A DNA stretch of 64,000 bases, taken from NCBI GenBank assembly GCA_002269645.1, contig NIVC01002341.1, positions 118,156 through 182,155 of the forward strand, in the 5' to 3' direction. Source of the stretch: Macrostomum lignano (taxonomy: Eukaryota). The position numbers were made by a program, and so were the translations under genes. The notes beneath the pieces were generated by a model, which made no database searches, was not told the origin of the DNA, and saw nothing but the letters and a program-made list of their open reading frames with translations. Shown here in pieces: positions 353-57,735 of the stretch (positions within the stretch are counted from its first letter, which is position 1; every line of letters begins with the position of its first letter).

Positions 353-437
353 CAAATTAAAAGAAACATCACAAGATATGATTTTCTAGTTGTTTAAGGT
401 TTATTAAAGTATTTCAAACTCATCATTGCGCTAACTT

Positions 438-17015: not shown

Positions 17016-17174
17016 CCGGCAAGGCGGAGCTGGCGCAGTTGATAATAATATTAATGACGTCGGGTGACGGACGGCGGTGACTGCTGATCTGATCTGCAAG
17101 TGCGTGTGTTGGTTGCTTGGCTGTTAGTGCAATGCCTTCATCATTTTAATTTCATTTGTTGCAATGTTGCTGGT

Positions 17175-37500: not shown

Positions 37501-39243
37501 TCCCTAATTTTATAGGCCTAGTATTTTTATATAGTTTAATATAGTTTTATGTCTTTTTTTGAAATTAGGTCTTAGGACTTCTTGTATATAACATTAATAA
37601 AAATTAACAATACAACTTTCAAAGGAATAATGTTCAATGTTGTTCTTGGCCTAGGCCTATCCGGGATAGCTCTGCAACTAAGAGCTAAGTAAGTAAGTGG
37701 CCTAGCCCTATGTCTTAAGGACATAATTCAAATTTCATAAGACTTTAATTTAATTTCTTCAATTTAAATGCATTCTATCATTATCAATAATAATAGCATT
37801 ATACTCATATTGTCATTATATTCTGACATGCTAAACAAATGGCGAAATGCCTATGCCACTGTATAAACTTTAAGTTTCTGTTTTAAAGGTGTATTATTAG
37901 GCTTCTCCTAGACCTAGCCTAGGCCTAGCATGTCTAGCAATAATGGAAATAGAATGAATGAAATCAATACCAATGAAAAATCTAACCAAGGACAAAGGAA
38001 GGTTCTATGCTTCTATTTTTTGTGCAAGTGCAATAGGTGTAGCCTGTAGGAATGAGCAGGCCCCTTAGTAGGCCTATAGTCTAGATAGGCCTAGCATCCT
38101 GATTTTGATAAAACACACCCTCAAATTAGACTAAGACCCTGAATGCGATTTTGCATCCTAGCGTCAGCGAAAAACACCCGGCTAGTTTTTTTAGGTTTTT
38201 TATGCAATAGGGCTGCTAATATAATAGGCCTACCATGTCGTTCCTAATCGCATCCTAGAAATTCTGAAATAGAACCTGGTACTAGGCTAATTCAGCAAAT
38301 CATAGCTGTTGTTCCTAGAGCGTAGTTTTATTAGATTAAACTTCAGAAAACCCCATTTTGCATTCATGTCCTGCTACTCATTAAGAGCTACTAATTCACA
38401 TATTGAGCAAGATCGCCAAATATTCAAAATTAAATGATCGGTAAGCCGTCTTGGGCTGAAGGGCTGGCTGAAGCAGCTGGCTTCTAAGAAAGGGCAAAAA
38501 TTTTTTTGAGGTTACGCTTACTATATAAAAACTATAACTAAAAATAGCAATTTTACTAAAATTCTAAAACTATATACACTATAAACAAATTAAAAATAAA
38601 AAAATAAAAAAGTACACTAATATTTTTTAGCACAAGCAGCAGAATAGAAACACTAGCTATCTTTAACTTGTAACATCTAACATGGCTTAAATGTGGGCAC
38701 TTTCTTTCTGCTGCCTTAAAATAGTATTACTTTACAAATGTAATTTCTAGCAGCCGCTTTCAACACCACCGATAACAATTTTTAAGGAATAAAACATAAC
38801 TGAACATCTGTATAAATTAATGCACACGTTTGACTGGCGGGGGTCCAAATACATGTACATATGTAACAATTCAACCTAGTACTTAGTAGTGTTGCATATG
38901 AAAAAAAAACGCCGATCAAATTTGCCACGTTTTTCAAATTAAATTTTTTGTTTCACATTCATTCATAACTATGAGTTTATAGACATTTTTTGAACTAAAA
39001 TCTTAATTAAATAAATTTATGCACCTGCATCCGTAAGGTATATACTGTATACGGTATAGTATATTGCAGTACTCGAATTATCAATACATACATGTTTGTA
39101 CATGTACGTATCATGCACTGTACGAAAATAGGAAATGACACATATTCAAAAAACAATAGCTCTGTAATCAAGTAGTAGCTAGTCTCGACAGTCATGCTAC
39201 ATGTATGTAAGTAGACTGGCTGCTGGCAGTGTTCGCAAAGTTC

Positions 39244-39837
39244 TCAGTCTCCCAGCACCAGAACCTCGTATGCCTTGCTCTTAAGCTCGGTTCCGCCGTA
39301 TGGAAAGTAGGCGCAGCGGTGGCTCTTGTGCACCTTGCCCACGCACACGAAGCCGTAGACCTTCATGGAGACTAAAGAAAAGCAGCAGTATTGAACACAA
39401 TAACTGTATCTGGCCTGTTGCAGTTCAAGGTGTTTGCTTAATTTGCTCAAAATAGCCAGTTTATTGTTATACCTCGCCACGAGCGATGTACAGCGGCTCG
39501 GCGTTCTTCTCTTGACCGGCCACCAGCGCCTTCTTCGGTACATCGCCGCCCTCCTCCTTCACCCACTTGAAGCCGCGCTGCCGTAGCAGCCGATGTCGGA
39601 GCGGACCAGCACCTCATACTCCGGGATGGAGTGCTCTGTACCCCAATTGGGCACGCTGGCAGCCGTGCAGCCCTGAGACAGCTGGCCCGGCACCCAGAGG
39701 CCGTCCAGCTTGGCTCTGACAACGTAGCAGCCCAGAGCAGCCTCGTCAGCATTTGGCGGGATGTGACCGTCTTTGGCATGCTGTCAGCTGACGCAGATCT
39801 CGATGCCCTTGTGTCCGGCATGCTTCACCTTGCTCAT
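39244..39837 (-). pseudogene. DM9-repeat (DUF3421) protein copy 1, disrupted
   Basis: 2-exon paralog of copy 4. It has TGA at codon 18 (39786-39784, TGG in the + strand copies) and a 2-bp insertion (aagccgcgctgcc vs aagccgctgcc at ~39575). Confidence 0.8.
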
Positions 39838-40224
39838 TGTGCGTTGCCTGAGTGTTTGCGGAATGATAATTGACTCTTGAGTGAGCTGTTGAAGTGTGAA
39901 AGCTTTCGGAGTGAACTGCTGCTGCTTAAATAGACAGGGCAGGCTCCCCTGACTGGCACGTCACGGTATTGGCTAAAAAGTGTGACAACGTGGCATTCAA
40001 AAGCATGACGTGCGACAACTTTTATTATGCAATTTATACAAATATTACATCCTTCATTAAGGTTCTTTTGTTGGAGATGCTGTGCTAGGAATAGCAGTCA
40101 TTTTTATTCAACAAAGAAATTTATTCTAGTCTTAGTCTTTAATTAAAATTCATTACTGGAGTTCCATCAGCAATTGCCTGAACCCTGAGATTATGGTTTC
40201 ACTGAGAATAGCATCTCTGACAAT

Positions 40225-40790
40225 CTCATCGCTGATTATTTCATCGTTGATAATCTCATCCCCGATAATCTTATCCCTGATGCTCTCATCCATGATAATC
40301 AGATGCCTGATAATCAGATCCCTGATAATCAGATCCCTGATAATCTCATCCCTGATAATCTGATCCCTGATAATCCCATCCCTGATAATCTCATTCCTGA
40401 TGATCTCCTTCCTGATAATCTGATCCCTGATAATCTGATTCCTGATAATCTGATCCCTGATAATCTGATCCCTGATAATCTGATCCCTGATAATCTCATC
40501 CCTGATAATCAGATCCCTGATAATCAGATCCCTGATGATCAGATCCCTGATGATCTCATCCCTGATAATCTGATCCCTGATAATCTGATCCCTGATAATC
40601 AGATCCCTGATAATCAGATCCCTGATAATCTGATCCCTGATGATCAGATCCCTGATAATCTGATCCCTGATAATCTGATCCCTGATAATCTGATCCCTGA
40701 TAATCTCATTCCTGATGATCTCATCCCTAACAATTTCATCCCTGGTAAACCCATTCCTAATAATTTCATTCCTGATAATCTCATTCTCAT
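40225..40790. repeat. 15-bp minisatellite (cctgataatctgatc)n between divergent DM9 copies 1 and 2
   Basis: Direct inspection. Confidence 0.92.
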
Positions 40791-41133
40791 CCCACACGCT
40801 GACCCCTTCTTCATGGCTAATAAAGCTTGCCAGTGGACAGAATTTCAGTGATGTTCAGTTTCAAACCAAACTCGGTCTAATTCTCATAAATCTCGTTATG
40901 GGCTGTGTCCAGATTGAATAATAAAGCGTCCATGATGAGAAGCTTTCTTGAATTTGAGTTTACGCATTTGTGAGAAAAAGTGCCTGGTTGCTCTAAATTC
41001 TAAAAGATATCTCACGCTGCGCTGCCATTATAGCAGCGTGCACGAGGTCCTGCAAGTAAATAAAACGCCGAAATGAATGTGATAACCGAAATGTAAAAAC
41101 GCAATTTAACGAATTGCACGTTGTCACACTTTT

Positions 41134-41186
41134 TAGCCAATAACCGTGACGTGCCAGTCAGGTGAGCTCTGCCCTGTCTATTTAAG
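41134..41186 (+). promoter_or_regulatory. Putative DM9 core promoter: CCAAT, TGACGT and TATTTAAG
   Basis: tagccaat 41134-41141, tgacgt 41147-41152 and tatttaag 41179-41186, ~90 nt before the ATG. Conserved in inverted form upstream of copies 1 and 3. Confidence 0.5.
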
Positions 41187-41273
41187 CAGCAGCAGTTCAC
41201 TCCGAAAGCTCACACACTTCAACAGCTCACTCAAGAGTCAATTATCATTCCGCAAACACTCAAGCAATGCACA

Positions 41274-41860
41274 ATGAGCAAGGTGAGCACGCCGGACACA
41301 AGGGCATCAAGATCTGCGTCAGCTGGCAGCATGCCAAAGACGGTGACATCCCGCCAAACGCTGTCGAGGCTGCTCCGGGCTGCTACGTTGTCAGAGCCAA
41401 GCTGGACGGCCTCTGGGTGCCGGGCCAGCTGTCTCAGGGCTGCACGGCTGCCAGCGTGCCCAATTGGGGTACAGAGCACTCCATCCCGGAGTACGAGGTG
41501 CTGGTCCGCTCCGACATCGGCTGCTACGGCAGCGGCTTCAAGTGGGTGAAGGAGGAGGGCGGCGACGTACCGAAGAAGGCGCTGGTGGCCGGTCGAGAGA
41601 AGAACGCCGAGCCGCTATACATTGCTCGTGGCGAGGTATAAAAATAAACTGGCTATTTTGAGCAAATTAAGCAAGCACCTTGAACTGCAACAGCCAGATA
41701 CAGTTATTGTGTTCAATACTGCTGCTTTTCTTTAATCTCCATGAAGGTCTACGGCTCCGTGTGCGTGGGAAAGGTGCACAAGAGCCACCGCTGCGCCTAC
41801 TTTCCATACGGGGGAACCGAGCTCAAGAGCAAGGCATACGAGGTTCTGTGCTGGGAGACT
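41274..41860 (+). pseudogene. DM9-repeat protein copy 2, frameshifted (or assembly indels)
   Basis: Exons 41274..41635 and 41747..~41860. There are 1-bp deletions near codon 5 (gtgagcac vs gtgaagcac) and near the end (ctgtgc vs ctggtgc), plus loss of the stop. The TATA-like TATTTAAG is intact at 41179. Confidence 0.75.
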
Positions 41861-42419
41861 GCTTTGCGAACACTGCCATGTCTGTCTATAGCGCAATGAC
41901 TGTCGAGACTGCTTGAGAATAAGAATGCATATTCATGCGTGTTTCTAACGTGTTCAAAAGTGGAGCATTACATGTATGTACCTGTGAAATAACATATTTT
42001 ATCACTACTTTTGTTAACCACCAATGACACATACTGTTGCTGATATAAACGAAAATATTTTATTGTATTTTTGACTGTCACCATTTTTGAATCGATTAGT
42101 TATAGATTAACAATAAAATGAACTGTAGAGCCAGGTGTTTACCTTGTTTGAGTAGACTTGTGAATTATCGTTAATAGAGGTTCAATGGTTACTTGATCAA
42201 TTTACTCATAAAACTTACTTGGCTACTGTCAGTAGCTGCTATGGGTATTTATTGTTATTTTGTAATTTAGTATAATTTTGTTCGAAATTTCTGGATCAAA
42301 TAAATGTTGAATATCAAATCAACCATTGGTAAATTATTTAGGCATGTATTTTTAATCTTCAAGCTAAGTTAATAAATGATTTTATTGATTTTCTTTACCA
42401 TGTAAAAAATGCTAGGCTG

Positions 42420-43000
42420 AAATGGGTGCCTGTGGCGCTGAAATGAGTGCTTGCGGCGCTAAAATGAGTGCCTACCGCGCTAAAATAAGTGCCTGCGGAG
42501 CTAAAATGAGTGCCTGCCGCACTAAAATGAGTGCCTGCGGCGCTAAAATGAGTGCCTGCGGCGCTAAAATGAATGCCTGCCGCGCTAAAATGAGTGCCTG
42601 CGGCGCCAAAATGAGTGACTGCAGCGCTAAAATGAGTGCCTACCGCGCTAAAATGAGTGCCTGCGGCGCTAAAATGAGTGCCTGCGGCGCCAAAATGAGT
42701 GCCTGCGGCGCCAAAATGAGTGCCTGCGGTGCTAAAATGAGTGCCTGCGGCGCTATAATGAGTGCCTGCGGCGCTAAAATGAGTGCCTGCGGCGCTAAAA
42801 TGAGTGCCTGTGGCGCTGAAATGAGTGCCTGCGGAGCTAAAATAAGTGCCTGTGGCGCTGAAATGAGTGCCTGCGGAGCTAAAATGAGTGCCTGCGGCGC
42901 TAATGAAGCGCTGACAACACCCATTCTAAAAATTATATACAAGTACATGTATAATTTTTGGCTTTGTCCCCTCACCATAAAATCCTTGGCAATGCCCCTG
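42420..43000. mobile_element. Truncated copy of the hAT-like MITE (21-bp array plus right TIR tggcaatgcccctg)
   Basis: Same gctaaaatgagtgcctgcggc array and similar 3' segment (ctttgtcccc..ccataaaatcc.tggc..gcccctg) as 2024-2525; left TIR not found. Confidence 0.65.
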
Positions 43001-43124
43001 TGTACAATAATACAACCAGTGAACGCCAGTGAATTATACTGTTCCCCACGCGGGATGCCAATTGCGTAACTATTGTACTTGCAGTTGGCTCACTAGATCA
43101 GGGTGGATAATTTTTAATTTCCAC

Positions 43125-43396
43125 CAGTGTGATATTTAATTACACCTGCCCTAATGGCCAGATGTGCAACCGACAGCTCTGCCGCAGCTATTGCGCGGCG
43201 CATCTGAAGGCTGCGTACGGCTGTTCAGTCCAAGGACTGGGGGGTCGCCACACACCCTCAGTTACCCCAGCTAATGCTGGCACCCATTTTACAGCTGGGT
43301 GAACTGAAGCAAAGCAGAGTTACGTGTAAGTGTCTTGCTCAAGGACACAATTTATTCCAAGTGGGATCGAGAATCGAACTCCCGACCTTTCGACCC
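43125..43396 (-). mobile_element. CORE-type (MIR-like) tRNA-derived SINE, 5'-truncated by the duplication junction
   Basis: The minus strand shows a B-box gagttcgattc, CORE-like tgtgtccttgagcaagacactta and ctgtaaaatggg. Confidence 0.65.
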
Positions 43397-45194
43397 ATCA
43401 AAATCTTACTGGACTCCCTAATATTATAGGCCTAGTATTTTTATATAGTTTAATATAGTTTAATGTCTTTTTTTGAAATTAGGTCTTAGGACTTCTTGTA
43501 TATAATATTAATAAAAATTAACAATACAACTTTCAAAGGAATAATGTTCAATGTTGTTCTTGGCCTAGGCCTATCTGGGATAGCCCTGCAGCTAAGAGCT
43601 AAGTAAGTAAGTGGCCTAGCCCTATGTCTTAAGGACATAATTCAATTTTCATAAGACTTTAATTTATTTTCTTCAATTTAAATGCATTCTATCATTATCA
43701 ATAATAATAGCATTATACTCATATTGTCATTATATTCTAACATGCTAAACAAATGGCGAAATGCCTATGCCACTGTATAAACTTTAAGTTTCTGTTTTAA
43801 AGGTGTATTATTAGGCTTCTCCTAGACCTAGCCTAGCATGTCTAGCAATAATGGAAATAAAATGAATGAAATCAATACCAATGAAAAATCTAACCAAGGA
43901 CAAAGGAAGGTTCTATGCTTAGGTTTATTTTTTGTGCAAGTGCAATAGGTGTAGCCTGTAGGAATGAGCAGGCCCCTTAGTAGGCCTATAGTCTAGATAG
44001 GCCTAGCATCCTGATTTTGATAAAACACACCCTCAAATTAGACTAGGCCTAAGACCCTGAATGCGATTTTGCATCCTAGCGTCAGCGAAAAACACCCGGC
44101 TAGTTTTTTTAGGTTTTTTATGCAATAGGGCTGCTAATATAATAGGCCTACCATGTCGTTCCTAATCGCATCCTAGAAATTCTGAAATAGAACCTGGTAC
44201 TAGGCTAATTCAGCAAATCATAGCTGTTGTTCCTAGAGCGTAGTTTTATTAGATTAAACTTCAGAAAACCCCATTTTGCATTCATGTCCTGCTACTCATT
44301 AAGAGCTACTAATTCACATATTGAGCAAGATCGCCAAATATTCAAAATTAAATGATCGGTAAGCCATCTTGGGCTGAAGGGCTGGCTGAAGCAGCTGGCT
44401 TCTAAGAAAGGGCAAAAATTTTCCGAGGTTACGCTTACTATATAAAAACTATAACTAAAAATAGCAATTTTACTAAAATTCTAAAACTATATACAGTATA
44501 AACAAATTAAAAATAAAAAAATAAAAAAGTACACTAATATTTTTTAGCACAAGCAGCAGAATAGAAACACTAGCTATCTTTGACTTCCTATATACTAAAT
44601 ACTAAAAATGAGTTGTCTGTCGGTATGCGATAGATTTCAGAAAAAATGGCTCAACCGATTTTCTTCAAACTTGCACCATTTGATCAGAAATTTTCCTGGG
44701 ACGGTACATGCATCTTGGCTAAGAAATTGCTCAATTTTAAAGGGATTAAATATTCGAAAAACATGCTTTTTTGCAAAGGTCAAGCAGCTCTTTCGACTTG
44801 AAATGCATTGTAAAAATGCGAGAGAAAAAACTGACTGACTGAATTTCAATTGTGATAAAGATTGCATCACAACCAGTTGAAAACAGTGTCGAAAAAATGC
44901 ACACAAGACTTGATTGTAATTGCGTAACCATATTGCTAACTTGAATTGAGACTGATACTGGCTGACTAAGAAATTGATTATGTCATAACTTTTTACTCTA
45001 ACTGACTTGCTATAAGAATTGAATTATAAGGGCCACAATTCATGTTCTCCAATTGAAAAGAGATAGCCTAGATGCGAACAGACTGGACTGCTAATGTAGC
45101 GAACTGGGTTCGAATCTTAGTAGTGCAAAATAATTTTTTATTAAAACACTTTAAAACACAAAATGCTAAACATAAAAGAAGCGCAATGTCAAAT

Positions 45195-48100: not shown

Positions 48101-48230
48101 ATGTCGAACATTAACGAGTCACCATGTCAAGTATATTCGTGACTCCATGTCAAACATAAAAGAGCTACCATGTCGAACATTAAAGAGCCACCATGTCGAA
48201 CATTGAAGAGCCACCATGTCAAACATTAAA
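45195..48230. repeat. 23-bp satellite (atgtcaaacattaaagagccacc)n inside Helitron unit 1
   Basis: About 130 variant copies with longer-period re-duplications. Confidence 0.95.
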
Positions 48231-48613
48231 TTTACACAATTTCAAACGTAAAAGTAAGCGTCGTGCCAATTTTAAAGGAGCCACTATAGAGCTAAGGAAA
48301 TTGTAGCACTAGCTTCTTATTGTATGGTGGATGCTTACTATTTGGGGATGCTTGCTATCCGGGAGGGGGATGCTTCCTATCTGGGGGATGCTTGCTATCT
48401 GGGGGATAGCTTGCTATCTGCTTGCAATCTGGGGGATGCTTGCTATCTGGGGGATGCTTCATGCTGTCTTGGGATGATTTCTTTTTGCATTACACTTTGT
48501 TTGAGCAGTTTGTCTGTCGTCTTTGTGAAGGCTTTATTTGGCTGTCTTTTTGTTACTTGTAGAGAACAGAGATTCTATCCAGATGTCCCCCAACGGGGGG
48601 CGAAGATTGCTAG

Positions 48614-48642
48614 TCCTATATACTAAAAATGGTCTGTCTGTG

Positions 48643-48675
<33 letters not shown>

Positions 48676-49796
48676 GTGATCGATTAGAGAAAAAATGGCT
48701 GGACCGATTTTGTTCAAACTTGCACTGTTCGATCAGAAATTTTCCCGTGACTGTACATGCATCGCGGCTAAGAAATTGCTCGATGCTAAAGGCATTAAAT
48801 ATTCGAAAAACATGCTTTTTTGCAAAGGTCAAGCAAACTTTTCGACTTGAAATGCATTGTAAGAATGCTAGAGAAAAAACTGACTGGTTGAATTCTGGTT
48901 CTGAAATAGATTGCATCATCACTGAATTGTAACTCCGACTTGAATTGAAAATGCAGTGTGGAAGCGTAGCACCAGACTTGATTTAAATTGCGTAACCATA
49001 TTGTTAACTGATACTGACTGACTGAGAAACTGATTATGTCATAACTGCTTCGTGTGATTTACTCTATGCTTGGATTTTAAACTGTTGAATTATATATATA
49101 TATAAGTGCAAAATTTGATGTTATCAAAAAGATGAGAACTAGCCTAGAGGTGAACAGACTGAACTGCTAAATGCAGCGACGATGGTTCGAATTTTCATAG
49201 AGTATATCCTATATACTAAAAATGGTCTGTCTGTGTCTATCTATCTATCTATCTATCTATCTATGTGATCGATTAGAGAAAAAATGGCTGGACCGATTTT
49301 GTTCAAACTTGCACTGTTCGATCAGAAATTTTCCCGTGACTGTACATGCATCGCGGCTAAGAAATTGCTCGATGCTAAAGGCATTAAATATTCGAAAAAC
49401 ATGCTTTTTTGCAAAGGTCAAGCAAACTTTTCGACTTGAAATGCATTGTAAGAATGCTAGAGAAAAAACTGACTGGTTGAATTCTGGTTCTGAAATAGAT
49501 TGCATCATCACTGAATTGTAACTCCGACTTGAATTGAAAATGCAGTGTGGAAGCGTAGCACCAGACTTGATTTAAATTGCGTAACCATATTGTTAACTGA
49601 TACTGACTGACTGAGAAACTGATTATGTCATAACTGCTTCGTGTGATTTACTCTATGCTTGGATTTTAAACTGTTGAATTATATATATATATAAGTGCAA
49701 AATTTGATGTTATCAAAAAGATGAGAACTAGCCTAGAGGTGAACAGACTGAACTGCTAAATGCAGCGACGATGGTTCGAATTTTCATAGAGTATAA
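48614..49796 (+). repeat. Tandem duplication of the ~593-bp Helitron 5' module
   Basis: 48614-49206 is repeated near-identically from 49207; both resemble 44586-45150. Confidence 0.9.
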
Positions 49797-49849
49797 TTTT
49801 TTTAATTAAAGCTTTTCAACGTCAGGAAAACTAAAAGACTTTTTAAAAA

Positions 49850-51385
49850 GAAGCGTCATGTAAAAATCATAGTAGCGTCATGTAAAAAATCGTAGAAGCG
49901 TCATATAAAAAATTATAGAAGCGTCATATAAAAATCATAGTTGCGTCATTTAAAAAATCATAGAAGCATCATATAAAAATCATAGATGCGTCATTTAAAA
50001 AACCATAGAAGCATCATGTAAACAATCATAGAAGCGTCATTTAAACAATCATAGAAGCATCATATAAAAATCATAGATGCGTCATTTAAAAAATCATAGA
50101 AGCATCATGTAAACAATCATAGAAGCGTCATTTAAAAAAATCATAGAAGCGTCATATAAAAATCATAGATGCGTCATTTAAAAAATCATGGAAGCGTCAT
50201 GTAAACAATCATAGAAGCGTCATGTGAAAATCATAGAAGCGTCACGTAAAGAATCATAGAAGCGTCATGTAAACAATCATAGAAGCGTCATGTAAACAAT
50301 CATAGAAGCGTCATGTAAAAAATCATAGAAGCGTCATGTAAACAATTATAGAAGCGTCATGTAAAAAAATCATAGAAGCGTCATGTAAACAATCATAGAA
50401 GCGTCATGTAAACAATCATAGAAGCGTCATGTAAACAATCATAGAAGCGTCATGTAAAAATCGTAGAAGCGTCATTTAAAAAATCATGGAAGCGTCATGT
50501 AAACAATCATAGAAGCGTCATGTAAAAAATCATAGAAGCGTCATATAAAAATCATAGATGCATCATTTAAAAAAATCATAGAAGCGTCATATAAAAAATC
50601 ATAGAAGCGTCATGTAAAAATCACAGAAGCGTCATGTAAACAACCATAGAAGCGTCATGTAAAAAATCATAGAAGAGTCATGTAAACAATCATAGAAGCG
50701 TCATGTAAGCAATCATAGAAGCGTCATGTAAACAATCATAGAAGCGTCATGTAAACAATCATAGAAGCGTCATGTAAGCAATCATAAAAGCATCATGTAA
50801 ACAATCATAGAAGCGTCATGTAAACAATCACAGAAGCGTCATGAAAAAATCATAGAAGCGTCATGTAAACAATCATAGAAGCGTCATGTAAACAATCATA
50901 GAAGCATCATGTAAAAAAATCATAGTAGCGTCATGTAAACAATCATAGAAGCGTCATGTAAAGAATCATAGAAGCGTCATGTAAAAAAATCATAGATGCG
51001 TCATTTAAAAAATCATAGAAGCATCATGTAAACAATCATAGAAGCGTCATTTAAAAAAATCATAGAAGCGTCATGTGAAAATCATAAAAGCGTCACGTAA
51101 AGAATCATAGAAGCGTCATGTAAACAATCATAGAAGCGTCATGTAAACAATCATAGAAGCGTCATGTAAACAATCATAGAAGCGTCATGTAAAAAATCAT
51201 AGAAGCGTCATGTAAACAATCATAGAAGCGTCATGTAAACAATCATAGAAGCGTCATTTAAAAAATCATAGAAGCGTCATGTAAACAATCATAGAAGCGT
51301 CATGTAAAAAATCATAGAAGCGTCATGTAAAAAATCATAGAAGCGTGATGTAAAAATCGTAGAAGCGTCATTTAAAAATCATAGA
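49850..51385. repeat. 23-bp satellite (catagaagcgtcatgtaaacaat)n inside Helitron unit 2
   Basis: About 65 copies. Confidence 0.95.
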
Positions 51386-52232
51386 AAATCATAAAAATCA
51401 AAAATTAAATGCAGCTATAATGCTGTGCTGGGGAGAAAAACTGAGACGTAAAGGCTCTCAGAGAATAACTGCTGAGATTACGGGGGGGGGGGTTTCTGAG
51501 ATGTCAAAGCAAAAGTCAGAAGCTACTTCAAAGTTCATGTACTTTACTCAATTTTTTTATTGCATTCTTTGTTGGCTCGCCACGGGAGGCGCTTATAGAA
51601 GAAGAGTCATGTAAAAAATAAAAGTAGCACTACGAGCGTATGTACGAGCTATACATAAAAGAAAAGTCATGTTCAAGTTAAAAGATTCATTTGGGAATTG
51701 CTACGATGTCAAAGCTTGGTGGAAATCGTTATAGTGCTTGATTCTTAAAGAAGGAATCACTAAAATGTCAAGGCTTAGGGGAGAAGAATTGCTGAGATTT
51801 CAAGGCTTTAGGTTGGGTTAAAGTTAGGTTTAGGTCAGGTGTGGGTTGAGGGTTATATTTTATCGGGTTTCAAGGTTAACAGAATAACAGGGGATTTTTT
51901 AGATTTCAAGGTTTATGGAGGCCATCGCTGACATGTTAAGGCTTACGGGGGGAATAGCTGAGATGTCAAGGCTCACGGGGTATAAATGAGATTTCAAGGC
52001 TAAAGTCAGAAGCTACATGTAGTTTATTGAAAACTTTTTATTACATTATTTGATGCCTCCTCAGGGGAGGGATCGCTGATAAAAAAAGCGTAATGTAAAA
52101 AATAAAAGAAGCTTCATGTCGAAGTTAAGAGATTCATTTGGGAATCCCTACGATGTCGAGGCTTGCAGGAAATCGCTATAATGCTGTAGTAGTGCTATAG
52201 TGACTCTTAGAGAGAATTACTGAAATTTCAAT

Positions 52233-52295
52233 GTTAGGTTAGGGTTAGGGTTAGGGTTAGGGCTAGGGTTAGGGTTAGGGTTAGGCTAGGGTTAG
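52233..52295 (+). repeat. Interstitial telomere-like (TTAGGG)n tract
   Basis: About 10 units, some CTAGGG or shortened variants; a more degenerate version lies at ~51808-51855. Confidence 0.85.
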
Positions 52296-53095
52296 AAGGT
52301 TGACAGATATTTTTAGATTTCCAAGGCTTATTGGGGGCATTGCTGAGATGTCAAGGGGGGAAGTTGATATGTCAAAGCTTGTGGGGGGGGGAATTACTGA
52401 CATGTCAAGGCTTACAAGGTTTGACAGGAGATTTTTTAAGATTTCAAGGATACATGTAGCTTATTAAAAAAACGTGTATTGCATTTATTTGGCTCCCCAA
52501 CGGGGGCGTAGATTGCTAGTGTAACATCTAACATGGCTTAAATGTTGGCACTTTCTTTCTGCTGCCTTAAAATAGTATTACTTTACAAATGTAATTTCTA
52601 GCAGCCCCTTTCAACACCACCGATAACAATTTTTAAGGAATAAAACATAACTGAACATCTGTATAAATTAATGCACACGTTTGACTGGCGGGGGTCCAAA
52701 TACATGTACATGTATATGTAACAATTCAACCTAGTACTTAGTAGTGTTGCATATGAAAAAAACGCCGATCAACTTTGCCACGTTTTTCAAATTAAATTTT
52801 ATTGTTTCACATTCATTCATAACTATGAGTTTATAGACATTTTTTGAACTAAAATCTTAATATAATAAATTTATGCACCTGCATCCGTAAGGTATATACT
52901 GTATACGGTATAGTATATTGCAGTACTCGAATTATCAATACATACATGTTTGTAGATGTACGTATCATGCACTGTACGAAAATAGGAAATGACGCATATT
53001 CAAAAAAACAATAGCTCTGTAATCAAGTAGTAGTCTCGACAGTCATGCTACATGATATGTAAGTAGACTGGCTGCTGGCAGTGTTCGCAAAGTTC

Positions 53096-53688
53096 TCAGT
53101 CTCCCAGCACCAGAACCTCGTATGCCTTGCTCTTGAGCTCGGTTCCGCCGTATGGAAAGTAGGCGCAGCGGTGGCTCTTGTGCACCTTGCCCACGCACAC
53201 GGAGCCGTAAACCTTCATGAAGATTAAAGAAAAGCAGCAGTGTTGAACACAATAACTGTATCTGGCTGTTGCAGTTTTCAAGGTGTTTGCTTAATTTGCT
53301 CAAAATAGCCAGTTTATTTTTATACCTCGCCACGAGCGATGTACAGCGGCTCGGCGTTCTTCTCTTGACCGGCCACCAGCGCCTTCTTCGGTACGTCGCC
53401 GCCCTCCTCCTTCACCCACTTGAAGCCGCTGCCGTAGCAGCCGATGTCGGAGCGGACCAGCACCTCGTACTCCGGGATGGAGTGCTCTGTACCCCAATTG
53501 GGCACGCTGGCAGCCGTGCAGCCCTGAGACAGCTGGCCCGGCACCCAGAGGCCGTCCAGCTTGGCTCTGACAACGTAGCAGCCCGGAGCAGCCTCGACAG
53601 CATTTGGCGGGATGTCACCGTCTTTGGCATGCTGTCAGCTGACGCAGATCTCGATGCCCTTGTGTCCGGCATGCTTCACCTTGCTCAT
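53096..53688 (-). pseudogene. DM9-repeat protein copy 3; intact except for one in-frame TGA at codon 18
   Basis: Exons 53688..53326 (363 nt) and 53212..53096 (117 nt) match copy 4 in length. TGA at 53637-53635 replaces Trp. Confidence 0.8.
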
Positions 53689-54064
53689 TGTGCGTTGCCT
53701 GAGTGTCTGCGGAATGATAATTGACTCTTGAGTGAGCTGTTGAAGTGTGTGAGCTTTCGGAGTGAACTGCTGCTGCTTAAATAGACAGGGCAGGCTCCCC
53801 TGACTGGCACGTCACGGTATTGGCTAAAAAGTGTGACAACGTGGCATTCAAAAGCACTTTTATTACACTACTTTTATTACGCAATTTATACAATTATTAC
53901 ATCCTTCATTCAGGTTCTTTTGTTGGAGATGCTGTGCTAGGAATCGCAGTCATTTTTATTCAACAAAGAAATTTATTCTAGTCTTAGTCTTTAATTAAAT
54001 TTCATTTCTGGAGTTCCATCAGCAATTGCCTGAACCCTGAGATTATAGTTTCACTGAGAATAGT

Positions 54065-55135
54065 ATCTCTGATAATCTCATCGCTGATTGTCTCATCGTT
54101 GATAATCCCATCCCTGATAATCTAATCCCTGATGCCCTCATCCATGATAATCAGATCCCTGATAATCTGATCCCTGATAATCTGATCCCTGATAATCTGA
54201 TCCCTGATAATCTGATCCCTGATAATCTGATCCCTGATAATCTGATCCCTGATAATCTGATCCCTGATAATCTGATCCCTGATAATCTCATTCCTGATAA
54301 TCTGGTCTCTGATAATCTGATCCCTGATAATCTGATCCCTGATAATCTTATTCCTGATAATCTGATCCCTGATAATCTCATTCCTGATAATCTGATCCCT
54401 GATAATCTGATCCCTGATAATCTGATCCCTGATAATCTGATCCCTGATAATCTGATCCCTGATAATCTGATCCCTGATAATCTGATCCCTGATAATCTGA
54501 TCCCTGATAATCTGATCCCTGATAATCTGATCCCTGATAATCTGATCCCTGATAATCTGATCCCTGATAATCTGATCCCTGATAATCTGATCCCTGATAA
54601 TCTGATCCCTGATAATCAGATCCCTGATAATCTGATCCCTGATAATCTGATCCCTGATAATCTGATCCCTGATAATCTGATCCCTGATAATCTGATCCCT
54701 GATAATCTGATCCCTGATAATCTGATCCCTGATAATCTCATTCCTGATAATCTGATCCCTGATAATCTCATTCCTGATAATCTGATCCTTGATAATCTGA
54801 TCCCTCATAATCTGATCCCTGATAATCTCATTCCTGATAATCTGGTCCCTGATAATCTGATCCCTGATAATCTGATCCCTGATAATCTGATCCCTGATAA
54901 TCTCATTCCTGATAATCTGATCCCTGATAATCTGATCCCTGATAATCTGATCCCTGATAATCTGATCCCTGATAATCTGATCCCTGATAATCTGATCCCT
55001 GATAATCTGATCCCTGATAATCTGATCCCTGATAATCTGATCCCTGATAATCTCATTCCTGATAATCTGGTCCCTGATAATCTGATCCCTGATAATCTCA
55101 TTCCTGATAATCTCATTCCTGATAATCTCATTCTC
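54065..55135. repeat. 15-bp minisatellite (cctgataatctgatc)n, expanded relative to unit A
   Basis: About 1.05 kb here vs about 0.55 kb at 40225-40790. Confidence 0.93.
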
Positions 55136-55549
55136 ATCCCAACACGCTGGCCCCTTCTTCATGGCTAATAAAGCTTGCCAGTGGACAGAATTTCAGTGAT
55201 GTTCAGTTTCAAACCAAACTCGGTCTAATTCTCATAAATCTCGTTATGGGCTGTGTCCGGATTGAATAATAAAGCGTCCATGATGAGAAGCTTTCTCGAA
55301 TTTGAGTTTACGCATTTGTGAGAAAAAGTGCCTGGTTGCTCTGAATTCTAAAAGATATCTCACGCTGCACTGCCATTATAGCAGCGTGCACGAGGTCCTG
55401 CAAGTAAATAAAAGCCGAAATGAATGTGATAACCGAAATGTAAAAACGCAATTTAACGAATTGCACGTTGTCACACTTTTTAGCCAATACCGTGCCGTGC
55501 CAGTCAGGTGAGCTCAATTATCATTCCGCAGACACTCAGGCAACGCACA

Positions 55550-56140
55550 ATGAGCAAGGTGAAGCACGCCGGACACAAGGGCATCGAGATCTGCGTCAGC
55601 TGGCAGCATGCCAAAGACGGTGACATCCCGCCAAATGCTGTCGAGGCTGCTCCGGGCTGCTACGTTGTCAGAGCCAAGCTGGACGGCCTCTGGGTGCCGG
55701 GCCAGCTGTCTCATGGCTGCACGGCTGCCAGCGTGCCCAATTGGGGTACAGAGCACTCCATCCCGGAGTACGAGGTGCTGGTCCGCTCCGACATCGGCTG
55801 CTACGGCAGCGGCTTCAAGTGGGTGAAGGAGGAGGGCGGCGACGTACCGAAGAAGGCGCTGGTGGCCGGTCGAGAGAAGAACGCCGAGCCGCTGTACATC
55901 GCTCGTGGCGAGGTATGAAAATAAACTGGCTATTTTGAGCAAATTAAGCAAACACCTTGAACTGCAACAGCCAGATACAGTTATTGTGTTCAACACTGCT
56001 GCTTTTCTTTAATCTCCATGAAGGTTTACGGCTCCGTGTGCGTGGGCAAGGTGCACAAGAGCCACCGCTGCGCCTACTTTCCATACGGGGGAACCGAGCT
56101 CAAGAGCAAGGCATACGAGGTTCTGGTGCTGGGAGACTGA
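55550..56140 (+). CDS. DM9-repeat (DUF3421) protein, 159 aa, two DM9 repeats, lectin-like; copy 4, the only intact ORF
   Basis: Model join(55550..55912,56024..56140). Repeats are SWQHAKDGDIPPNAVEAAPGCYVVRA..VPGQL..EYEVLV and FKWVKEEGGDVPKKALVAGREKNAEPLYIARGEVYGSVCVGKVHKSHRCAYFPYGGTE..YEVLV. No signal peptide. Confidence 0.85.
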
Positions 56141-56689
56141 GAACTTTGCGAACACTGCCATGCTTGTCTATAGCGCAATGACTGTCGAGACCGCGTGAGA
56201 ATAAGAATCCAAAGTCATGCGTGTTTCTATCGTGTTCAAAAGTGGAGCATTATGTACCTGTGAAATAACATATTTTATCACTACTTTTGTTAAGCACCAA
56301 TGACACATACTGTTGCTGATATAAACGAAAATATTTTATTGTATTTTTGACTGTCACCGTTTTTTTTTAAATCGATTAGTTATAGATTAACAATAAAATG
56401 TACTGTAGAGCCAGGTGTTTACCTTGTTTGAGTAGACTTGCGAATTATCGTTAATAGAGGTTTAATGGTTACTTGATCAATTTACTGATAAAACATTTAC
56501 TGGACTACTGTGAGTAGCTGCTGTGGATATTTATTGGTATATTGCAATTTAGTATAATTTTGTTTGAAATTTCCGGATAAAATAAATTTTGAATATCAAA
56601 TCAACCATTGGTAAATTATTTAGGCTTCAGGCTTTGTTAATAAACGATTTTATTGATTTTCTTTACCACGTAAAAAATGCTAGGTGGGT

Positions 56690-57315
56690 TCTGAAATGGG
56701 TGCCTGCAGCACTAAAATGAGTGCCTGCGGCGCTAAAATGAGTGCCTGCGGCGCTGAAATGAGTGCCTGCGGCGCTAAAATGAGTGCCTGCGGCGCTAAA
56801 ATGAGTGCCTGTGGTGCTAAAATGAGTGCCTGCGGCGCTAAAATGAGTGCCTGCGGCGCTAAAATGAGTGCCTGTGGTGCTAAAATGAGTGCCTGCGGCG
56901 CTAAAATGAGTGCCTGCGGCGCTAACATGAGTGCCTGCGGTACTAAAATGAGTGCCTGCGGCGCTAAAATGAGTGCCTGTGGCGCTAAAATGAGTGCCTG
57001 CGGTACTAAAATGAGTGCCTGCGGCGCTAAAATGAGTGCCTGCGGCGCTAAAATGAGTGCCTGCGGTACTAAAATGAGTGCCTGCGCGCTGAAATGAGTG
57101 CCTGCGGCGCTGAAATGAGTGCCTGTGACGCTAAAATGAGTGCCTGCGGAGCTAAAATGAGTGCCTGCGGCGCTGAAATGAGTGCCTGCGGAGCTAAAAT
57201 GAGTGCCTGCGGCGCTAATGAAGCGCTGACAAAACCCATTCTAAAAATTATGTACAAGTACATGTATAATTCTTGGCTTTGTCCCCTCACCATAAAATCC
57301 TTGGCAATGCCCCTG
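56690..57315. mobile_element. Truncated hAT-like MITE copy with 21-bp array (unit B paralog of 42420-43000)
   Basis: Same array and right TIR at 57302-57315. Confidence 0.65.
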
Positions 57316-57431
57316 TGTACAATAGTACAACCAGTGAACGCCAGTGAATTATACCGTTCCCCGCGCGGGATGCCAGTTGCGTAACTACTTGCAGTTGGCT
57401 CACTAGATCAGAATGGATAATTTTTAATTTC

Positions 57432-57735
57432 CAACAGTGTGATATTTAATTACACTTGCCCTAATGGCCAGATGTGCAACCGACAGCTCTGCCGCAGCTA
57501 TTGCGCGGCGCATCTGAAGGCTGCGTACGGCTGTTCAGTCCAAGGACTGGGGGGGTCGCCACACACCCTCAGTTACCCCAGCTAATGCTGGCACCCATTT
57601 TACAGCTGGGTGAACTGAAGCAAAGCAGAGTTACGTGTAAGTGTCTTGCCCAAGGACACAAATTATTCCAAGTGGGATCGAGAATCGAACTCCCGACCTT
57701 TCGACCCTCTAACTACTATAGGCTACAACTGCCTC
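57432..57735 (-). mobile_element. CORE-type tRNA-derived SINE with complete head
   Basis: The minus strand shows an A-box-like tagcctatagtagttagag, B-box gagttcgattc, CORE-like tgtgtccttgggcaagacactta and ctgtaaaatggg. Confidence 0.68.

What the first reader, a model, noticed from the sequence alone, without database searches (positions are those of the whole stretch)
39190..56190. Four DM9 genes arranged as two duplicated head-to-head palindromic pairs, each copy broken in a different way
Seen: each 5.9-kb unit holds an inverted pair with ~0.75-kb arms around a 15-bp satellite spacer. Copy 1 has a UGA plus a 2-bp insertion, copy 2 has 1-bp frameshifts with an intact promoter, copy 3 has a UGA only, and copy 4 has an intact ORF but lacks the TATA segment. 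Known: DM9/DUF3421 proteins such as oyster CGL1 and trematode DM9 proteins are carbohydrate-binding or immune-related, and palindromic gene pairs can repair each other by arm-to-arm gene conversion. Inference: this is a rapidly turning-over lectin-like cassette. The lesions are complementary, so it could be a birth-and-death locus or a conversion reservoir in which intact coding and intact promoter parts are kept on different copies.
Basis: partly seen in the sequence, partly recalled or inferred. Interest (0 to 1): 0.75.

Follow-up and report, generated by a model that had tools for sequence, protein, structure and literature searches.

The report
Duplicated head-to-head flatworm DM9 genes
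A small cluster of four recently duplicated lectin-like (DM9) genes in the flatworm Macrostomum lignano, in which the two left-hand copies share one inherited stop codon and the two right-hand copies still have open reading frames: an ordinary gene family gaining and losing copies, with some copy-to-copy sequence exchange.

Summary
The window is the last 64 kb of M. lignano contig NIVC01002341.1. A 5.9-kb segment (37483-43396) is tandemly duplicated. The second unit (43397-57707) also carries a 7.9-kb Helitron-like insertion. Each unit holds a head-to-head pair of two-exon DM9 genes (Pfam PF11901, E 1e-33) around a 15-bp satellite.

"Each copy broken differently" is overstated:
- Copies 1 and 3 are positional homologues and share one W18 TGA, so it most simply predates the tandem duplication.
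- Copy 2 is not dead. A private C-to-T change creates a new ATG 7 nt upstream, and the 1-bp deletion puts it in frame. The result is an open 173-codon, two-repeat DM9 ORF behind an intact TATA box.
- Copy 4 keeps the canonical 159-codon ORF but lost 70 bp, including a TATA box conserved in a paralogous locus.

Substitutions show purifying selection (8 non-synonymous : 10 synonymous; right-arm dN/dS 0.12). Outgroup polarisation gives four sites where copies 3 and 4 share derived bases against the duplication tree (P ≤ 5e-5 without exchange), so arm-to-arm conversion occurred in unit 2. A "complementary-lesion reservoir" is neither needed nor supported.

Lesions and the duplication could not be checked against reads. 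Expression is untested.

The parts
37483..43396 (.). Tandem unit 1 (5,914 bp): X1 (37483-38669) plus U1 (38670-43396)
   Evidence: Self-BLAST gives X1~X2 at 97% and U1~U2 at 92-95% including gaps and satellite arrays; mismatch in unique parts is mostly 1.3-2.7% with two patches at 6-7%. Breakpoints were read.
43397..57707 (.). Tandem unit 2: X2 (43397-44585), a 7.9-kb insertion, and U2 (52520-57707)
   Evidence: The U1|X2 junction reads ...CGACCC|ATCAAAATC. The sequence after U2 and before X1 is unrelated.
44586..52519 (+). Helitron-like non-autonomous insertion carrying two 23-bp satellite arrays. It is specific to unit 2.
   Evidence: It starts TC and ends CTAG, with a CCCCAACGGGG hairpin about 12 nt before the 3' end and no target-site duplication. 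The exact empty site is preserved at 38669/38670 in unit 1. The features are compared with PMC4067079.
39244..39837 (-). DM9 copy 1 (left arm, unit 1), a pseudogene. Exon 1 39837-39473, intron 39472-39361, exon 2 39360-39244. TGA at 39786-39784; 2-bp insertion at 39578-39577.
   Evidence: Polarised private changes on this branch are two synonymous, one non-synonymous, one intronic and one synonymous in exon 2; three further non-synonymous private differences could not be polarised or are ancestral in c1.
41267..41899 (+). DM9 copy 2 (right arm, unit 1), an open 173-codon ORF. New ATG 41267 (canonical ATG 41274), exon 1 to 41635, intron 41636-41746, exon 2 41747-41899. Deletions at 41285/6 (1 bp), 41847/8 (1 bp) and 41861/2 (4 bp).
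   Evidence: ORFs 41267..41641 and 41741..41899. The spliced CDS is 522 nt and in frame. Pfam DM9 E 3.4e-33. ACG-to-ATG is the only one-step rescuing change available.
53096..53688 (-). DM9 copy 3 (left arm, unit 2), a pseudogene by TGA at 53637-53635 only. Exon 1 53688-53326, intron 53325-53213, exon 2 53212-53096.
   Evidence: There is no in-frame Met downstream for re-initiation, because the protein has only M1.
55550..56140 (+). DM9 copy 4 (right arm, unit 2), the canonical open 159-codon ORF. Exon 1 55550-55912, intron 55913-56023, exon 2 56024-56140. A 70-bp upstream deletion at 55513/55514 removes the TATA box.
   Evidence: It aligns without gaps to the annotated 159-aa paralogue.
41178..41187 (+). 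TATA-like core promoter motif CTATTTAAGC of c2. The same motif occurs for c1 at 39933-39924 (-) and c3 at 53784-53775 (-), and is absent from c4. A CCAAT motif (AGCCAATA) is at 41135, 55482, 39974 (-) and 53825 (-).
   Evidence: The motif is conserved in both arms of the paralogous locus although the surrounding 5' region is only ~55% identical.
40213..40781 (.). 15-bp satellite in the unit 1 spacer (38 units, 26 with an intact TGATAA)
54065..55128 (.). 15-bp satellite in the unit 2 spacer (71 units, 68 with an intact TGATAA)
53210..53707 (-). Stretch of c3 holding the sites that share derived bases with c4: 53707, 53616, 53602 and 53210, plus 53242 (unpolarised). The c4 partners are 55531, 55622, 55636, 56026 and 55994.

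Best explanation
This is a young cluster of DM9 (DUF3421) lectin-like genes in Macrostomum lignano that is gaining and losing copies, with some local gene conversion.

Proposed history:
1. An inverted duplication made a head-to-head gene pair. Each arm is one whole transcription unit, from about 70 bp upstream of a conserved TATA box to just past the stop codon.
2. The left-arm gene then acquired a Trp18 TGG-to-TGA nonsense mutation.
3. A 5.9-kb tandem duplication copied both arms, which is why copies 1 and 3 carry the same TGA.
4. A 7.9-kb Helitron-like element later inserted into unit 2.

Fate of the copies:
- Copy 1 decayed further, gaining a 2-bp insertion and non-synonymous differences from the other copies.
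- The right-arm gene stayed under purifying selection and survives as two differently altered copies.
- Copy 4 has the canonical ORF but lost its TATA box and probable transcription start.
- Copy 2 keeps the promoter elements and has an open ORF, through a new ATG that is brought into frame by a 1-bp deletion. It also has a new C-terminal tail after the last DM9 strand.
- In unit 2 the two arms have exchanged short patches by gene conversion, but this has neither repaired nor spread the stop codon.

Shown here: the architecture, the lesions, the open frames, the substitution spectrum and the reticulate site patterns. Inferred: the order of events, promoter function, present-day expression and sugar binding.
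For: Architecture.

DM9 identity: Pfam PF11901, E 1.5e-33 for c4 and 3.4e-33 for c2. CGL1 in the PDB matches at E 4e-17. A low-confidence AF2 model still returns CGL1 as its top Foldseek hit.

Gene model:
- c4 aligns without gaps over 159 aa to the annotated paralogue.
- GC drops from 60-64% in the exons to 36% in the intron.
- The splice sites are shared with the annotated paralogous gene.

Shared TGA: it is at the same codon in c1 and c3, which are positional homologues in the U1/U2 alignment. The outgroups have TGG.

c2 rescue:
- The ORF from 41267 is open through both exons.
- Only one single-base change in the 86 nt upstream could create a rescuing ATG, and c2 has it. The chance is about 0.003 at c2's private substitution rate.
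- A paralogue, Lp (P0016), is annotated although its tail is also frameshifted right after YEVLV.

Constraint:
- 8 non-synonymous (including the nonsense change) against 10 synonymous changes on the four-copy tree, where about 77% non-synonymous is expected (p = 0.003).
- c2-c4 dN/dS is 0.12.

TATA: CTATTTAAGC is conserved between loci whose 5'UTRs are ~55% identical.

Conversion:
- Derived-base sets {3,4} x2, {2,3,4} and {1,3,4} occur. No incompatible site unites c1 with c2.
- Simulation without exchange gives a mean of 0.03-0.13 such sites and P(>=4) <= 5e-5.
- c3-c4 differ at 11 sites against 26 for c1-c2 (p = 0.02).
Against: No read-level or independent-assembly check of any lesion or of the tandem junction was possible.

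Assembly quality:
- The source is a PacBio CLR/Canu assembly polished with Pilon. It has 180 Mb of blocks that are at least 95% identical (PMC5730564).
- Small indels are suspiciously common in DM9 copies of this assembly: c1, c2, Lp and R'' all have them.

Expression:
- Neither the c2 nor the c4 product is in the protein collection, which does hold the GenBank proteins of this same contig and of three paralogous DM9 copies. The window copies are therefore apparently unannotated.
- This is weak evidence against expression. The GenBank annotation also dropped transcripts that overlap repeat annotations.

Other points:
- The c2 N-terminus replaces five residues (MSKVK) that are identical across paralogues only 74% identical overall.
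- The substitution counts are small.
- A GENECONV-like run test is not significant for any pair.
- The finding that c2 is rescued was made post hoc.
Confidence: 0.55

Rival explanations
1. All four copies are now dead. The open frame of c2 is a coincidence, c4 is promoterless, and the working DM9 genes of this subfamily lie elsewhere, for example at the Mlig001642 locus or in the other copies of this block. On this reading the cluster is only a pseudogene graveyard.
For: - No product of c2 or c4 is present among the annotated proteins, while the paralogues P0015-P0017 are.
- c2 lost the conserved MSKVK N-terminus and the original stop codon.
- c4 lacks the conserved TATA block.
- All four copies carry Gln instead of the essential Lys in one sugar site.
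Against: - dN/dS is 0.12 on the right-arm lineage after the tandem duplication, and the whole tree shows a deficit of non-synonymous changes.
- The one possible rescuing ATG is exactly the one that arose.
- Splice sites and both DM9 repeats are intact in c2 and c4.
Confidence: 0.25
2. Assembly artefact. The two 'units' would be two haplotypes or homeologous copies of one locus that were laid out in tandem, and some 1-2-bp indels would be uncorrected long-read consensus errors. The real locus would then be one head-to-head pair with two alleles per gene.
For: - U1 and U2 differ by about 2% in unique sequence, the same order as the window against the second genomic copy of the block, NIVC01000614.1 (1-3% in non-coding sequence).
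- The units differ by a 7.9-kb insertion, the kind of structural difference that creates assembly bubbles.
- The locus lies 6-25 kb from a contig end.
- The assembly is known to be redundant.
- The ratio of indels to substitutions is high.
Against: - The window contains no N bases.
- The U1|X2 junction is seamless, which requires spanning reads in an overlap assembler.
- The TGA substitution, the 70-bp deletion and the 4-bp deletion are not typical polishing errors.
- The c2 1-bp deletion is matched by a compensating substitution, which an error would not be.
Confidence: 0.13
3. One reading: a conversion reservoir in which intact coding parts and intact promoter parts are deliberately kept on different copies and recombined by arm-to-arm conversion.
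For: Conversion between c3 and c4 is supported, and also between the arms of the paralogous pair. c4 (good ORF, no TATA) sits opposite c3 (TATA, stop codon).
Against: - The TGA is one inherited lesion, not an independent one.
- c2 already has both a promoter and an open ORF.
- Conversion patches flank the TGA within 19 bp yet left it in place.
- The arms are no more similar between units than the flanks are.
- Nothing suggests selection to keep broken copies.
Confidence: 0.05

Closest known systems
Macrostomum lignano DM9 pair Mlig014153g1 / Mlig001642g3 (NIVC01000717.1:68134-88703; proteins PAA77890.1 and PAA77888.1; UniProt A0A1I8J9Y8-like)
   Same: - Same subfamily: 74% amino-acid identity, both 159 aa, identical first 19 residues, the same intron position and the same TATA motif.
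- Same head-to-head arrangement, with arms that start about 135-160 bp upstream of the ATG and end near the stop codon.
- It also shows arm-to-arm conversion and copy loss in a second haplotype or homeolog.
   Different: - Its arms are 91% identical, against 96.6-98.4% here, and it has a 4.6-kb spacer without the 15-bp satellite and no tandem duplication.
- The canonical sugar-site residues (Lys52, Tyr61, Tyr64) are kept there but are Gln52, Ser61 and Asn64 in all four window copies.
- Those genes are annotated in GenBank; the window copies are not.
CGL1 / CgDM9CP-1, the mannose-specific DM9 lectin of Crassostrea gigas (PDB 5id8, 5idb, 5mh0-3)
   Same: - A two-repeat DM9 protein of similar size, with sequence E 4e-17 and about 30% identity.
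- One site keeps the Lys/Glu pair (Lys130, Glu146) together with Glu109 for Asp22 and Tyr139 for His52.
   Different: - The long and short repeat forms are in the opposite order, as in trematode FgDM9-1.
- The other site has Gln52 in place of Lys114, Ser61 for Tyr123, and Asn64-Trp65 for Phe126-Ala127.
- No binding data exist for the flatworm protein.
Fasciola gigantica FgDM9-1 (trematode mannose-binding DM9 protein, PMC8106982)
   Same: A flatworm two-repeat DM9 protein with an N-terminal extension, a short first repeat and a long second repeat, and Tyr-Gly in place of CGL1 Phe55-Ala56. The window proteins have Tyr142-Gly143.
   Different: According to the paper, FgDM9-1 keeps Lys and Glu in both sites. 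The window genes lack one Lys. The genomic organisation of FgDM9-1 was not examined here.
Palindromic (inverted-repeat) gene pairs homogenised by arm-to-arm gene conversion, such as the human Y-chromosome ampliconic palindromes (from general knowledge, not tested against those sequences here)
   Same: Inverted gene-bearing arms around a unique or satellite spacer, with evidence of intra-palindrome exchange in unit 2 and in the paralogous pair.
   Different: - The arms are only about 0.8 kb and 96.6-98.4% identical, not tens to hundreds of kb at more than 99.9%.
- Conversion is patchy and has not removed a null allele.
- One palindrome (unit 1) shows no exchange since the duplication.
Helitron / Helentron-type rolling-circle transposons with internal tandem repeats (PMC4067079)
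   Same: The 7.9-kb insertion has a 5' TC, a 3' CTAG, a short palindrome about 12 nt from the 3' end, no target-site duplication, a T-flanked insertion site, and tandem repeats filling about half of the element.
   Different: - It has no Rep/helicase ORF.
- No subterminal inverted repeats were found.
- It inserted at T^T rather than A^T, so it fits neither the canonical Helitron nor the Helentron description fully.
- No second copy was available for comparison.

Membership tests
DM9 / DUF3421 protein family (Pfam PF11901) | Significant match to the DM9 profile above the curated threshold | tested here: met
   c4 scores 115.5 bits (cut-off 26.2, E 1.5e-33) and c2 scores 114.5 bits.
DM9 / DUF3421 protein family (Pfam PF11901) | Two tandem DM9 repeats in a protein of about 140-180 aa | tested here: met
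   Residues 16-78 and 90-156 each align to a CGL1 repeat.
DM9 / DUF3421 protein family (Pfam PF11901) | CGL1-type two-domain beta fold | tested here: inconclusive
   The AF2 model built from a 3-sequence alignment has mean pLDDT 50. Its best Foldseek hits are nevertheless CGL1/CgDM9CP-1, with TM 0.52-0.60 and E 4.5e-8.
Mannose-binding DM9 lectins (CGL1 type) | Lys and Glu pair, plus an aromatic residue, in the site formed with the long repeat (CGL1 Asp22, Lys43, His52, Glu59) | tested here: met
   Glu109, Lys130, Tyr139 and Glu146 in the HMMER alignment, mapped onto the residues listed in PMC4932603.
Mannose-binding DM9 lectins (CGL1 type) | Lys and Glu pair in the second site (CGL1 Lys114, Tyr123, Glu130) | tested here: not met
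   All four copies have Gln52, Ser61 and Glu68, while the paralogue keeps Lys52 and Tyr61. Lys-to-Ala abolishes binding in CGL1.
Mannose-binding DM9 lectins (CGL1 type) | Demonstrated carbohydrate binding or agglutination | not testable with these tools
   Needs recombinant protein and glycan assays.
Palindromes maintained by arm-to-arm gene conversion | Inverted arms that carry the genes, separated by a spacer | tested here: met
Palindromes maintained by arm-to-arm gene conversion | Site patterns or tracts that require exchange between the arms | tested here: met
   For unit 2 only: four polarised sites are incompatible with the duplication tree, and all of them unite c3 with c4. P <= 5e-5 without exchange. 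The run-length (GENECONV-like) test is not significant, and unit 1 has no such sites.
Palindromes maintained by arm-to-arm gene conversion | Near-identity of the arms (far closer than the age of the duplication predicts) | tested here: not met
   Arm mismatch is 1.6% in unit 2 and 3.4% in unit 1, against about 2% between the units.
Birth-and-death multigene family | Recent duplicates together with pseudogenes and copy-number differences between haplotypes or paralogous blocks | tested here: met
   The tandem and inverted duplicates include two nonsense-bearing copies. The partner gene is present in NIVC01000717.1 but absent from NIVC01003251.1.
Helitron-like elements (for the 7.9-kb insertion) | 5' TC, 3' CTRR, a subterminal 3' palindrome and no target-site duplication | tested here: met
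   The defining features come from PMC4067079.
Helitron-like elements (for the 7.9-kb insertion) | Insertion between A and T (canonical Helitron), or subterminal inverted repeats (Helentron/HINE) | tested here: not met
   The insertion site is CT^TG. No inverted match longer than 8 nt was found between the two ends.

The most novel reading that the evidence does not exclude
The head-to-head DM9 cassettes of M. lignano might form a diversifying recognition-gene system. On this reading, a variable block (codons ~33-66, which holds the sugar-site loops of repeat 1) sits in a framework kept nearly identical at the nucleotide level by gene conversion among arms and loci. Dead arms such as c1 and c3 would then serve as conversion donors, loosely like pseudogene donors in other conversion-based diversity systems. 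The evidence leaves this open: synonymous divergence between loci is 0.12 in codons 1-32 but 0.6-1.0 in codons 33-66, and conversion between arms is real. However, dN/dS in the variable block is below 1, at 0.4-0.7.
Probability: 0.06. Interest if true: 0.65.

Novelty: new member of a known kind. Interest (0 to 1): 0.3.

Why it matters
Mainly as a correction and a caution. A locus that looks like "four genes each broken differently" turns out to be one inherited null allele copied twice, plus two right-arm copies that still have open DM9 frames. One of those frames was restored by a paired start-codon gain and 1-bp deletion. This matters for annotation: these copies are apparently missing from the GenBank annotation of this contig, and a naive frameshift call would discard copy 2.

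The locus also gives a compact, dated example of an inverted duplication, a tandem duplication, a rolling-circle transposon insertion with its empty site preserved, and short-patch arm-to-arm conversion, all in a flatworm model whose genome is highly redundant. If the proteins are expressed, the Lys-to-Gln change in one sugar site makes them a natural test of how DM9 lectin specificity shifts. None of this opens a long-standing question.

Tried and rejected
- **Selenocysteine or recoded UGA at codon 18.** Rejected. c2, c4 and both outgroup genes have TGG there. The Trp is the conserved first residue of the DM9 repeat. TGA is also the genes' own stop codon.
- **Re-initiation downstream of the TGA.** Rejected. 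The protein has no internal Met.
- **The 70-bp gap in c4 as precise loss of a 5'UTR intron.** Rejected. The GTGAGC is retained in c4, and the break has only a 2-bp microhomology.
- **X1-U1-X2 as an LTR element.** Rejected. U2 follows X2 colinearly once the insertion is removed. X starts ATCAAAA and ends AACTT rather than TG...CA. The breakpoints fit a simple two-unit tandem duplication.
- **tRNA and Rfam scans.** Nothing found. The tRNA-like strings at the unit ends are part of a dispersed repeat.
- **Fetching an independent copy of the locus.** This failed.
  - P0001 has no contig on record.
  - The neighbouring LEO1 gene has no GenBank M. lignano protein to anchor a 10-kb walk.
  - Only the first 13 kb of the second block (NIVC01000614.1) could be compared.
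- **Structure prediction of c2.** Low confidence (pLDDT 50) because only three sequences were available.
- **GENECONV-style longest-run permutation.** Not significant for any pair.
- **Purifying selection on the arms relative to the flanks.** Not visible at the level of total divergence: the arms differ by 1.9-2.0% and the flanks mostly by 1.3-2.7%. It appears only in the ratio of non-synonymous to synonymous changes.
- **Positive selection in the variable block.** dN/dS is below 1.
- **Antisense ORFs across exon 1 (151-160 aa in c3 and c4).** No Pfam match. Treated as a by-product of GC-rich coding sequence.

Full report
**Source of the window**

A 396-aa ORF at 619-1809 is 99% identical to Macrostomum lignano protein BOX15_Mlig031712g5. 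A sister protein in the same cluster, BOX15_Mlig031712g3, lies on contig NIVC01002341.1 of assembly Mlig_3_7, GCA_002269645.1. The fetched stretch of that contig is identical to the window over all 12,906 overlapping bases. The coordinates place the window as the last 64,000 nt of this 182,155-nt contig.

That assembly was built from PacBio data with Canu and polished with Pilon. It has 15% simple and tandem repeats and 180 Mb of non-repetitive blocks that are at least 95% identical. About 39% of its genes are trans-spliced (PMC5730564).

A second copy of the same block exists on NIVC01000614.1. It is almost identical in exons and 1-3% different in non-coding sequence over the 13 kb that could be compared.

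**Architecture**

Self-comparison shows the following:
- X1 (37483-38669) matches X2 (43397-44586) at 97%.
- U1 (38669-43396) matches U2 (52520-57707) colinearly.

The junctions were read directly. X1 runs straight into U1. U1 ends ...CGACCC and is followed at once by the first bases of X2. X2 and U2 are separated by 7,934 bp that have no counterpart in unit 1. The sequence before X1 and after U2 is unrelated.

This is a two-unit tandem duplication of a 5,914-bp segment, with a later insertion into unit 2. The window has no N bases.

Each U holds two inverted arms of about 0.77 kb:
- 39224-39998 and 41111-41878 in unit 1.
- 53076-53849 and 55464-56160 in unit 2.

Each pair of arms flanks a spacer that contains a 15-bp satellite, with 38 units in unit 1 and 71 in unit 2. 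tblastn finds exactly four DM9 copies in the window.

**Gene model**

Each arm is one gene, with these parts in order:
- A CCAAT motif.
- CTATTTAAGC about 40 bp further on.
- An ATG about 90 bp after that.
- A 363-nt exon.
- A phase-0 intron of about 111 nt (GTATAA...GAAG).
- A 117-nt second exon.

GC is 64% and 60% in the exons and 36% in the intron. The spliced copy-4 product is 159 aa. It matches Pfam DM9 (PF11901) at E 1.5e-33. It aligns without gaps to a 159-aa M. lignano DUF3421 protein at 74% identity, with the first 19 residues identical. Its best solved relative is the oyster mannose lectin CGL1 (E 4e-17).

**The lesions**

| Copy | Arm, unit | Lesions |
|---|---|---|
| c1 | left, unit 1 | TGG-to-TGA at codon 18; 2-bp insertion |
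| c2 | right, unit 1 | two 1-bp deletions; an unreported 4-bp deletion at the old stop codon |
| c3 | left, unit 2 | the codon-18 TGA only |
| c4 | right, unit 2 | open ORF; 70-bp upstream deletion that removes the TATA motif |

Two points change the picture.

First, c1 and c3 are positional homologues in the tandem units and carry the same TGA. The outgroup genes have TGG. One mutation before the tandem duplication is therefore the simplest account.

Second, c2 is not broken by its first frameshift:
- A c2-private C-to-T change at 41268 creates an ATG 7 nt upstream of the canonical start.
- The 1-bp deletion 12 nt downstream of the canonical ATG brings that new ATG into the DM9 frame.
- The spliced ORF (41267-41635 plus 41747-41899) is 522 nt and open. 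It encodes 173 aa and scores the same against Pfam DM9 as c4 does.
- In the 86 nt upstream of the start, only one single-base change could create such a rescuing ATG, and c2 has exactly that one. The chance is roughly 0.003 at c2's private substitution rate, although this was noticed post hoc.
- The second 1-bp deletion falls just after the final YEVL strand and only replaces the tail.
- A paralogue, P0016, is annotated in GenBank although its tail is also frameshifted right after YEVLV.

If the 1-bp deletion were a consensus error, the canonical ATG would be in frame instead. Either way c2 keeps its coding capacity.

**Selection**

Total divergence between the units is about the same in the arms (1.9-2.0%) as in most unique flanks (1.3-2.7%). 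The kind of change differs, however:
- On the four-copy tree there are 8 non-synonymous changes (including the nonsense change) and 10 synonymous ones. About 77% non-synonymous would be expected (p = 0.003).
- c2-c4 dN/dS is 0.12, c1-c3 is 0.30 and c3-c4 is 0.45.

The right-arm gene was therefore constrained for much of the time since the duplication.

**Gene conversion**

A GENECONV-like longest-run permutation gives nothing significant. A real outgroup became available, though. The paralogous DM9 genes Mlig014153g1 and Mlig001642g3 on NIVC01000717.1 also form a head-to-head pair. Their arms are 91% identical to each other and 75-78% identical to the window arms.

Polarising the 20 usable variable sites gave these derived sets:

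| Derived in | Sites |
|---|---|
| c1 only | 5 |
| c2 only | 5 |
| c1 + c3 | 3 |
| c2 + c4 | 2 |
| c3 + c4 | 2 |
| c2 + c3 + c4 | 1 |
| c1 + c3 + c4 | 1 |
| c3 only | 1 |

The four sets that conflict with the duplication tree all unite c3 with c4. None unites c1 with c2. Simulation on that tree without exchange gives a mean of 0.03-0.13 such sites and P(at least 4) no greater than 5e-5, even with strong rate heterogeneity.

Consistent with this, c3-c4 differ at 11 positions against 26 for c1-c2 (p = 0.02). The c3 and c4 branches are also short.

So the arms of unit 2 have exchanged short patches in both directions. One patch begins within 19 bp of the TGA, which nevertheless remains in c3 and is absent from c4.

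In the paralogous pair the signature is plainer. There are 0 mismatches in 163 nt (codons 67-121) and 3 in the intron, next to 24 mismatches in 102 nt (codons 33-66).

A third block, NIVC01003251.1, is 97-98.6% identical to that locus. It lacks the left gene altogether through a 5.15-kb indel, and its right gene is frameshifted. Gain, loss and conversion of copies are therefore general features of this subfamily.

**Promoter**

CTATTTAAGC and its immediate surroundings are conserved between the two loci, although the rest of the 5' region is only about 55% identical. This supports reading the motif as the core promoter, and reading the c4 deletion as a real regulatory lesion. That remains an inference. 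With 39% of genes trans-spliced in this species, c4 could in principle be expressed from another start.

Neither the c2 nor the c4 product is in the protein collection. The collection does hold the GenBank proteins of this same contig and of the three paralogous copies. The window copies therefore appear to be unannotated. This is weak evidence against expression, because transcripts that overlap repeat annotations were removed before GenBank submission.

**Function**

I mapped the CGL1 binding residues from PMC4932603 onto the HMMER alignment:
- One site is kept: Glu109, Lys130, Tyr139 and Glu146, with Tyr142-Gly143 as in the trematode lectin FgDM9-1.
- The other site has Gln52 in place of the essential lysine, Ser61 for Tyr, and Asn64-Trp65 for Phe-Ala. 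This holds in all four copies.
- The paralogue keeps Lys52, Tyr61 and Tyr64.

Lectin activity is therefore plausible for one site only, and it is untested. A three-sequence AF2 model was of low confidence (pLDDT 50), although its top Foldseek hits were CGL1.

**Verdict**

The best account is a family that gains and loses copies, with local conversion: a dead left-arm gene copied twice, and a constrained right-arm gene that survives in two altered forms. The "complementary-lesion reservoir" idea is not needed.

The main uncertainty is the assembly. The tandem duplication and the small indels could not be checked against reads or against the second copy of the block. Expression is unknown.

Noticed in passing
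window 44586-52519: A 7,934-bp insertion is specific to tandem unit 2. It starts TC and ends CTAG, has a CCCCAACGGGG hairpin about 12 nt from the 3' end and has no target-site duplication. The exact empty site (CTTTAACT^TGTAAC) is preserved at 38669/38670. About half of the insertion is two 23-bp satellite arrays (45168-48230 and 49849-51386), and it also holds a 593-bp tandem duplicate (48614-49206 / 49207-49795, 99.3%). It looks like a non-autonomous Helitron-like element that carries satellites.
   Followed up: partly
window 40213-40781 and 54065-55128: The 15-bp satellite between the divergent DM9 genes has a perfect GATA-factor-type core (TGATAA) in 26 of 38 and 68 of 71 units. These two arrays hold 94 of the 140 TGATAA/TTATCA sites in the whole window. 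Whether the array acts as a shared enhancer is pure speculation.
   Followed up: partly
alignment A4, window exon 1 against L002:4620-5177 and L002:10001-10570: Divergence between DM9 paralogues is strongly mosaic. Synonymous divergence is 0.12 in codons 1-32 and 0.21 in codons 67-121, but 0.6-1.0 in codons 33-66, which hold the repeat-1 sugar-site loops. The intron is only about 44% identical. This suggests conversion of the framework segments between loci, with one block escaping. dN/dS in that block is 0.4-0.7, so positive selection is not shown.
   Followed up: partly
L004 (NIVC01003251.1:58415-79047) against L002 (NIVC01000717.1:68134-88703): The paralogous locus exists in two versions that are 97-98.6% identical. 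One has the head-to-head DM9 pair. The other lacks the left gene through a 5.15-kb indel, and its remaining gene (P0015, 180 aa) is frameshifted after PYGGT.
   Followed up: partly
window 43135-43391 and 57445-57702; L002:13189-13411 and L002:6086-6322: A dispersed repeat of about 250 bp, 85-89% identical between copies, contains a tRNA-like T-arm string (GGGAGTTCGATTCTC on the minus strand). It is probably a SINE. The right breakpoint of the tandem duplication lies at its end. ARAGORN and Rfam call no tRNA there.
   Followed up: partly
window 42416-42903, 56694-57218 and 2179-2427 (with flank to 2526): A 21-bp satellite (GCTAAAATGAGTGCCTGCGGC) with about 100 bp of shared flank recurs 40 kb away inside the GT92 gene region. 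It is a dispersed satellite-bearing module.
   Followed up: no
window 1-12328 against L001 (NIVC01000614.1): A second genomic copy of this whole block exists in the same assembly. Exons are nearly identical (3 mismatches in the first 2 kb), non-coding sequence differs by 1-3%, and satellite arrays differ in length and unit (for example a 4-nt CATG present in every unit of the array at 6.5-7.9 kb in one copy). The gene name suffix (g5) and the UniProt variants suggest that still more copies exist.
   Followed up: partly
window 619-2906 (+), 4200-4826 (-), 10.5-12.4 kb (-), 16605-17099 (-), 23029-24051 (-), 30.6-34.6 kb (-): Other genes in the window are a glycosyltransferase family 92 gene, an astacin metalloprotease exon, WDR54, an RNase H1 N-terminal (Cauli_VI) domain ORF, an ankyrin-repeat exon and a LEO1 homologue. 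Many of the long 'ORFs' elsewhere are just translated minisatellites.
   Followed up: partly
window 53269-53724 (+) and 55514-55996 (-): Long antisense ORFs (151 and 160 aa) run across exon 1 of c3 and c4 and are shorter in c1 and c2. They have no Pfam match and are probably a by-product of GC-rich coding sequence.
   Followed up: partly
window 39970-40070 against 53821-53921, and 42187-42387 against about 56470-56670: There are two short patches where U1 and U2 differ by 6-11%, against a background of about 2%. They were not explained. Possible causes are local hypermutable low-complexity sequence, misalignment or older sequence.
   Followed up: no
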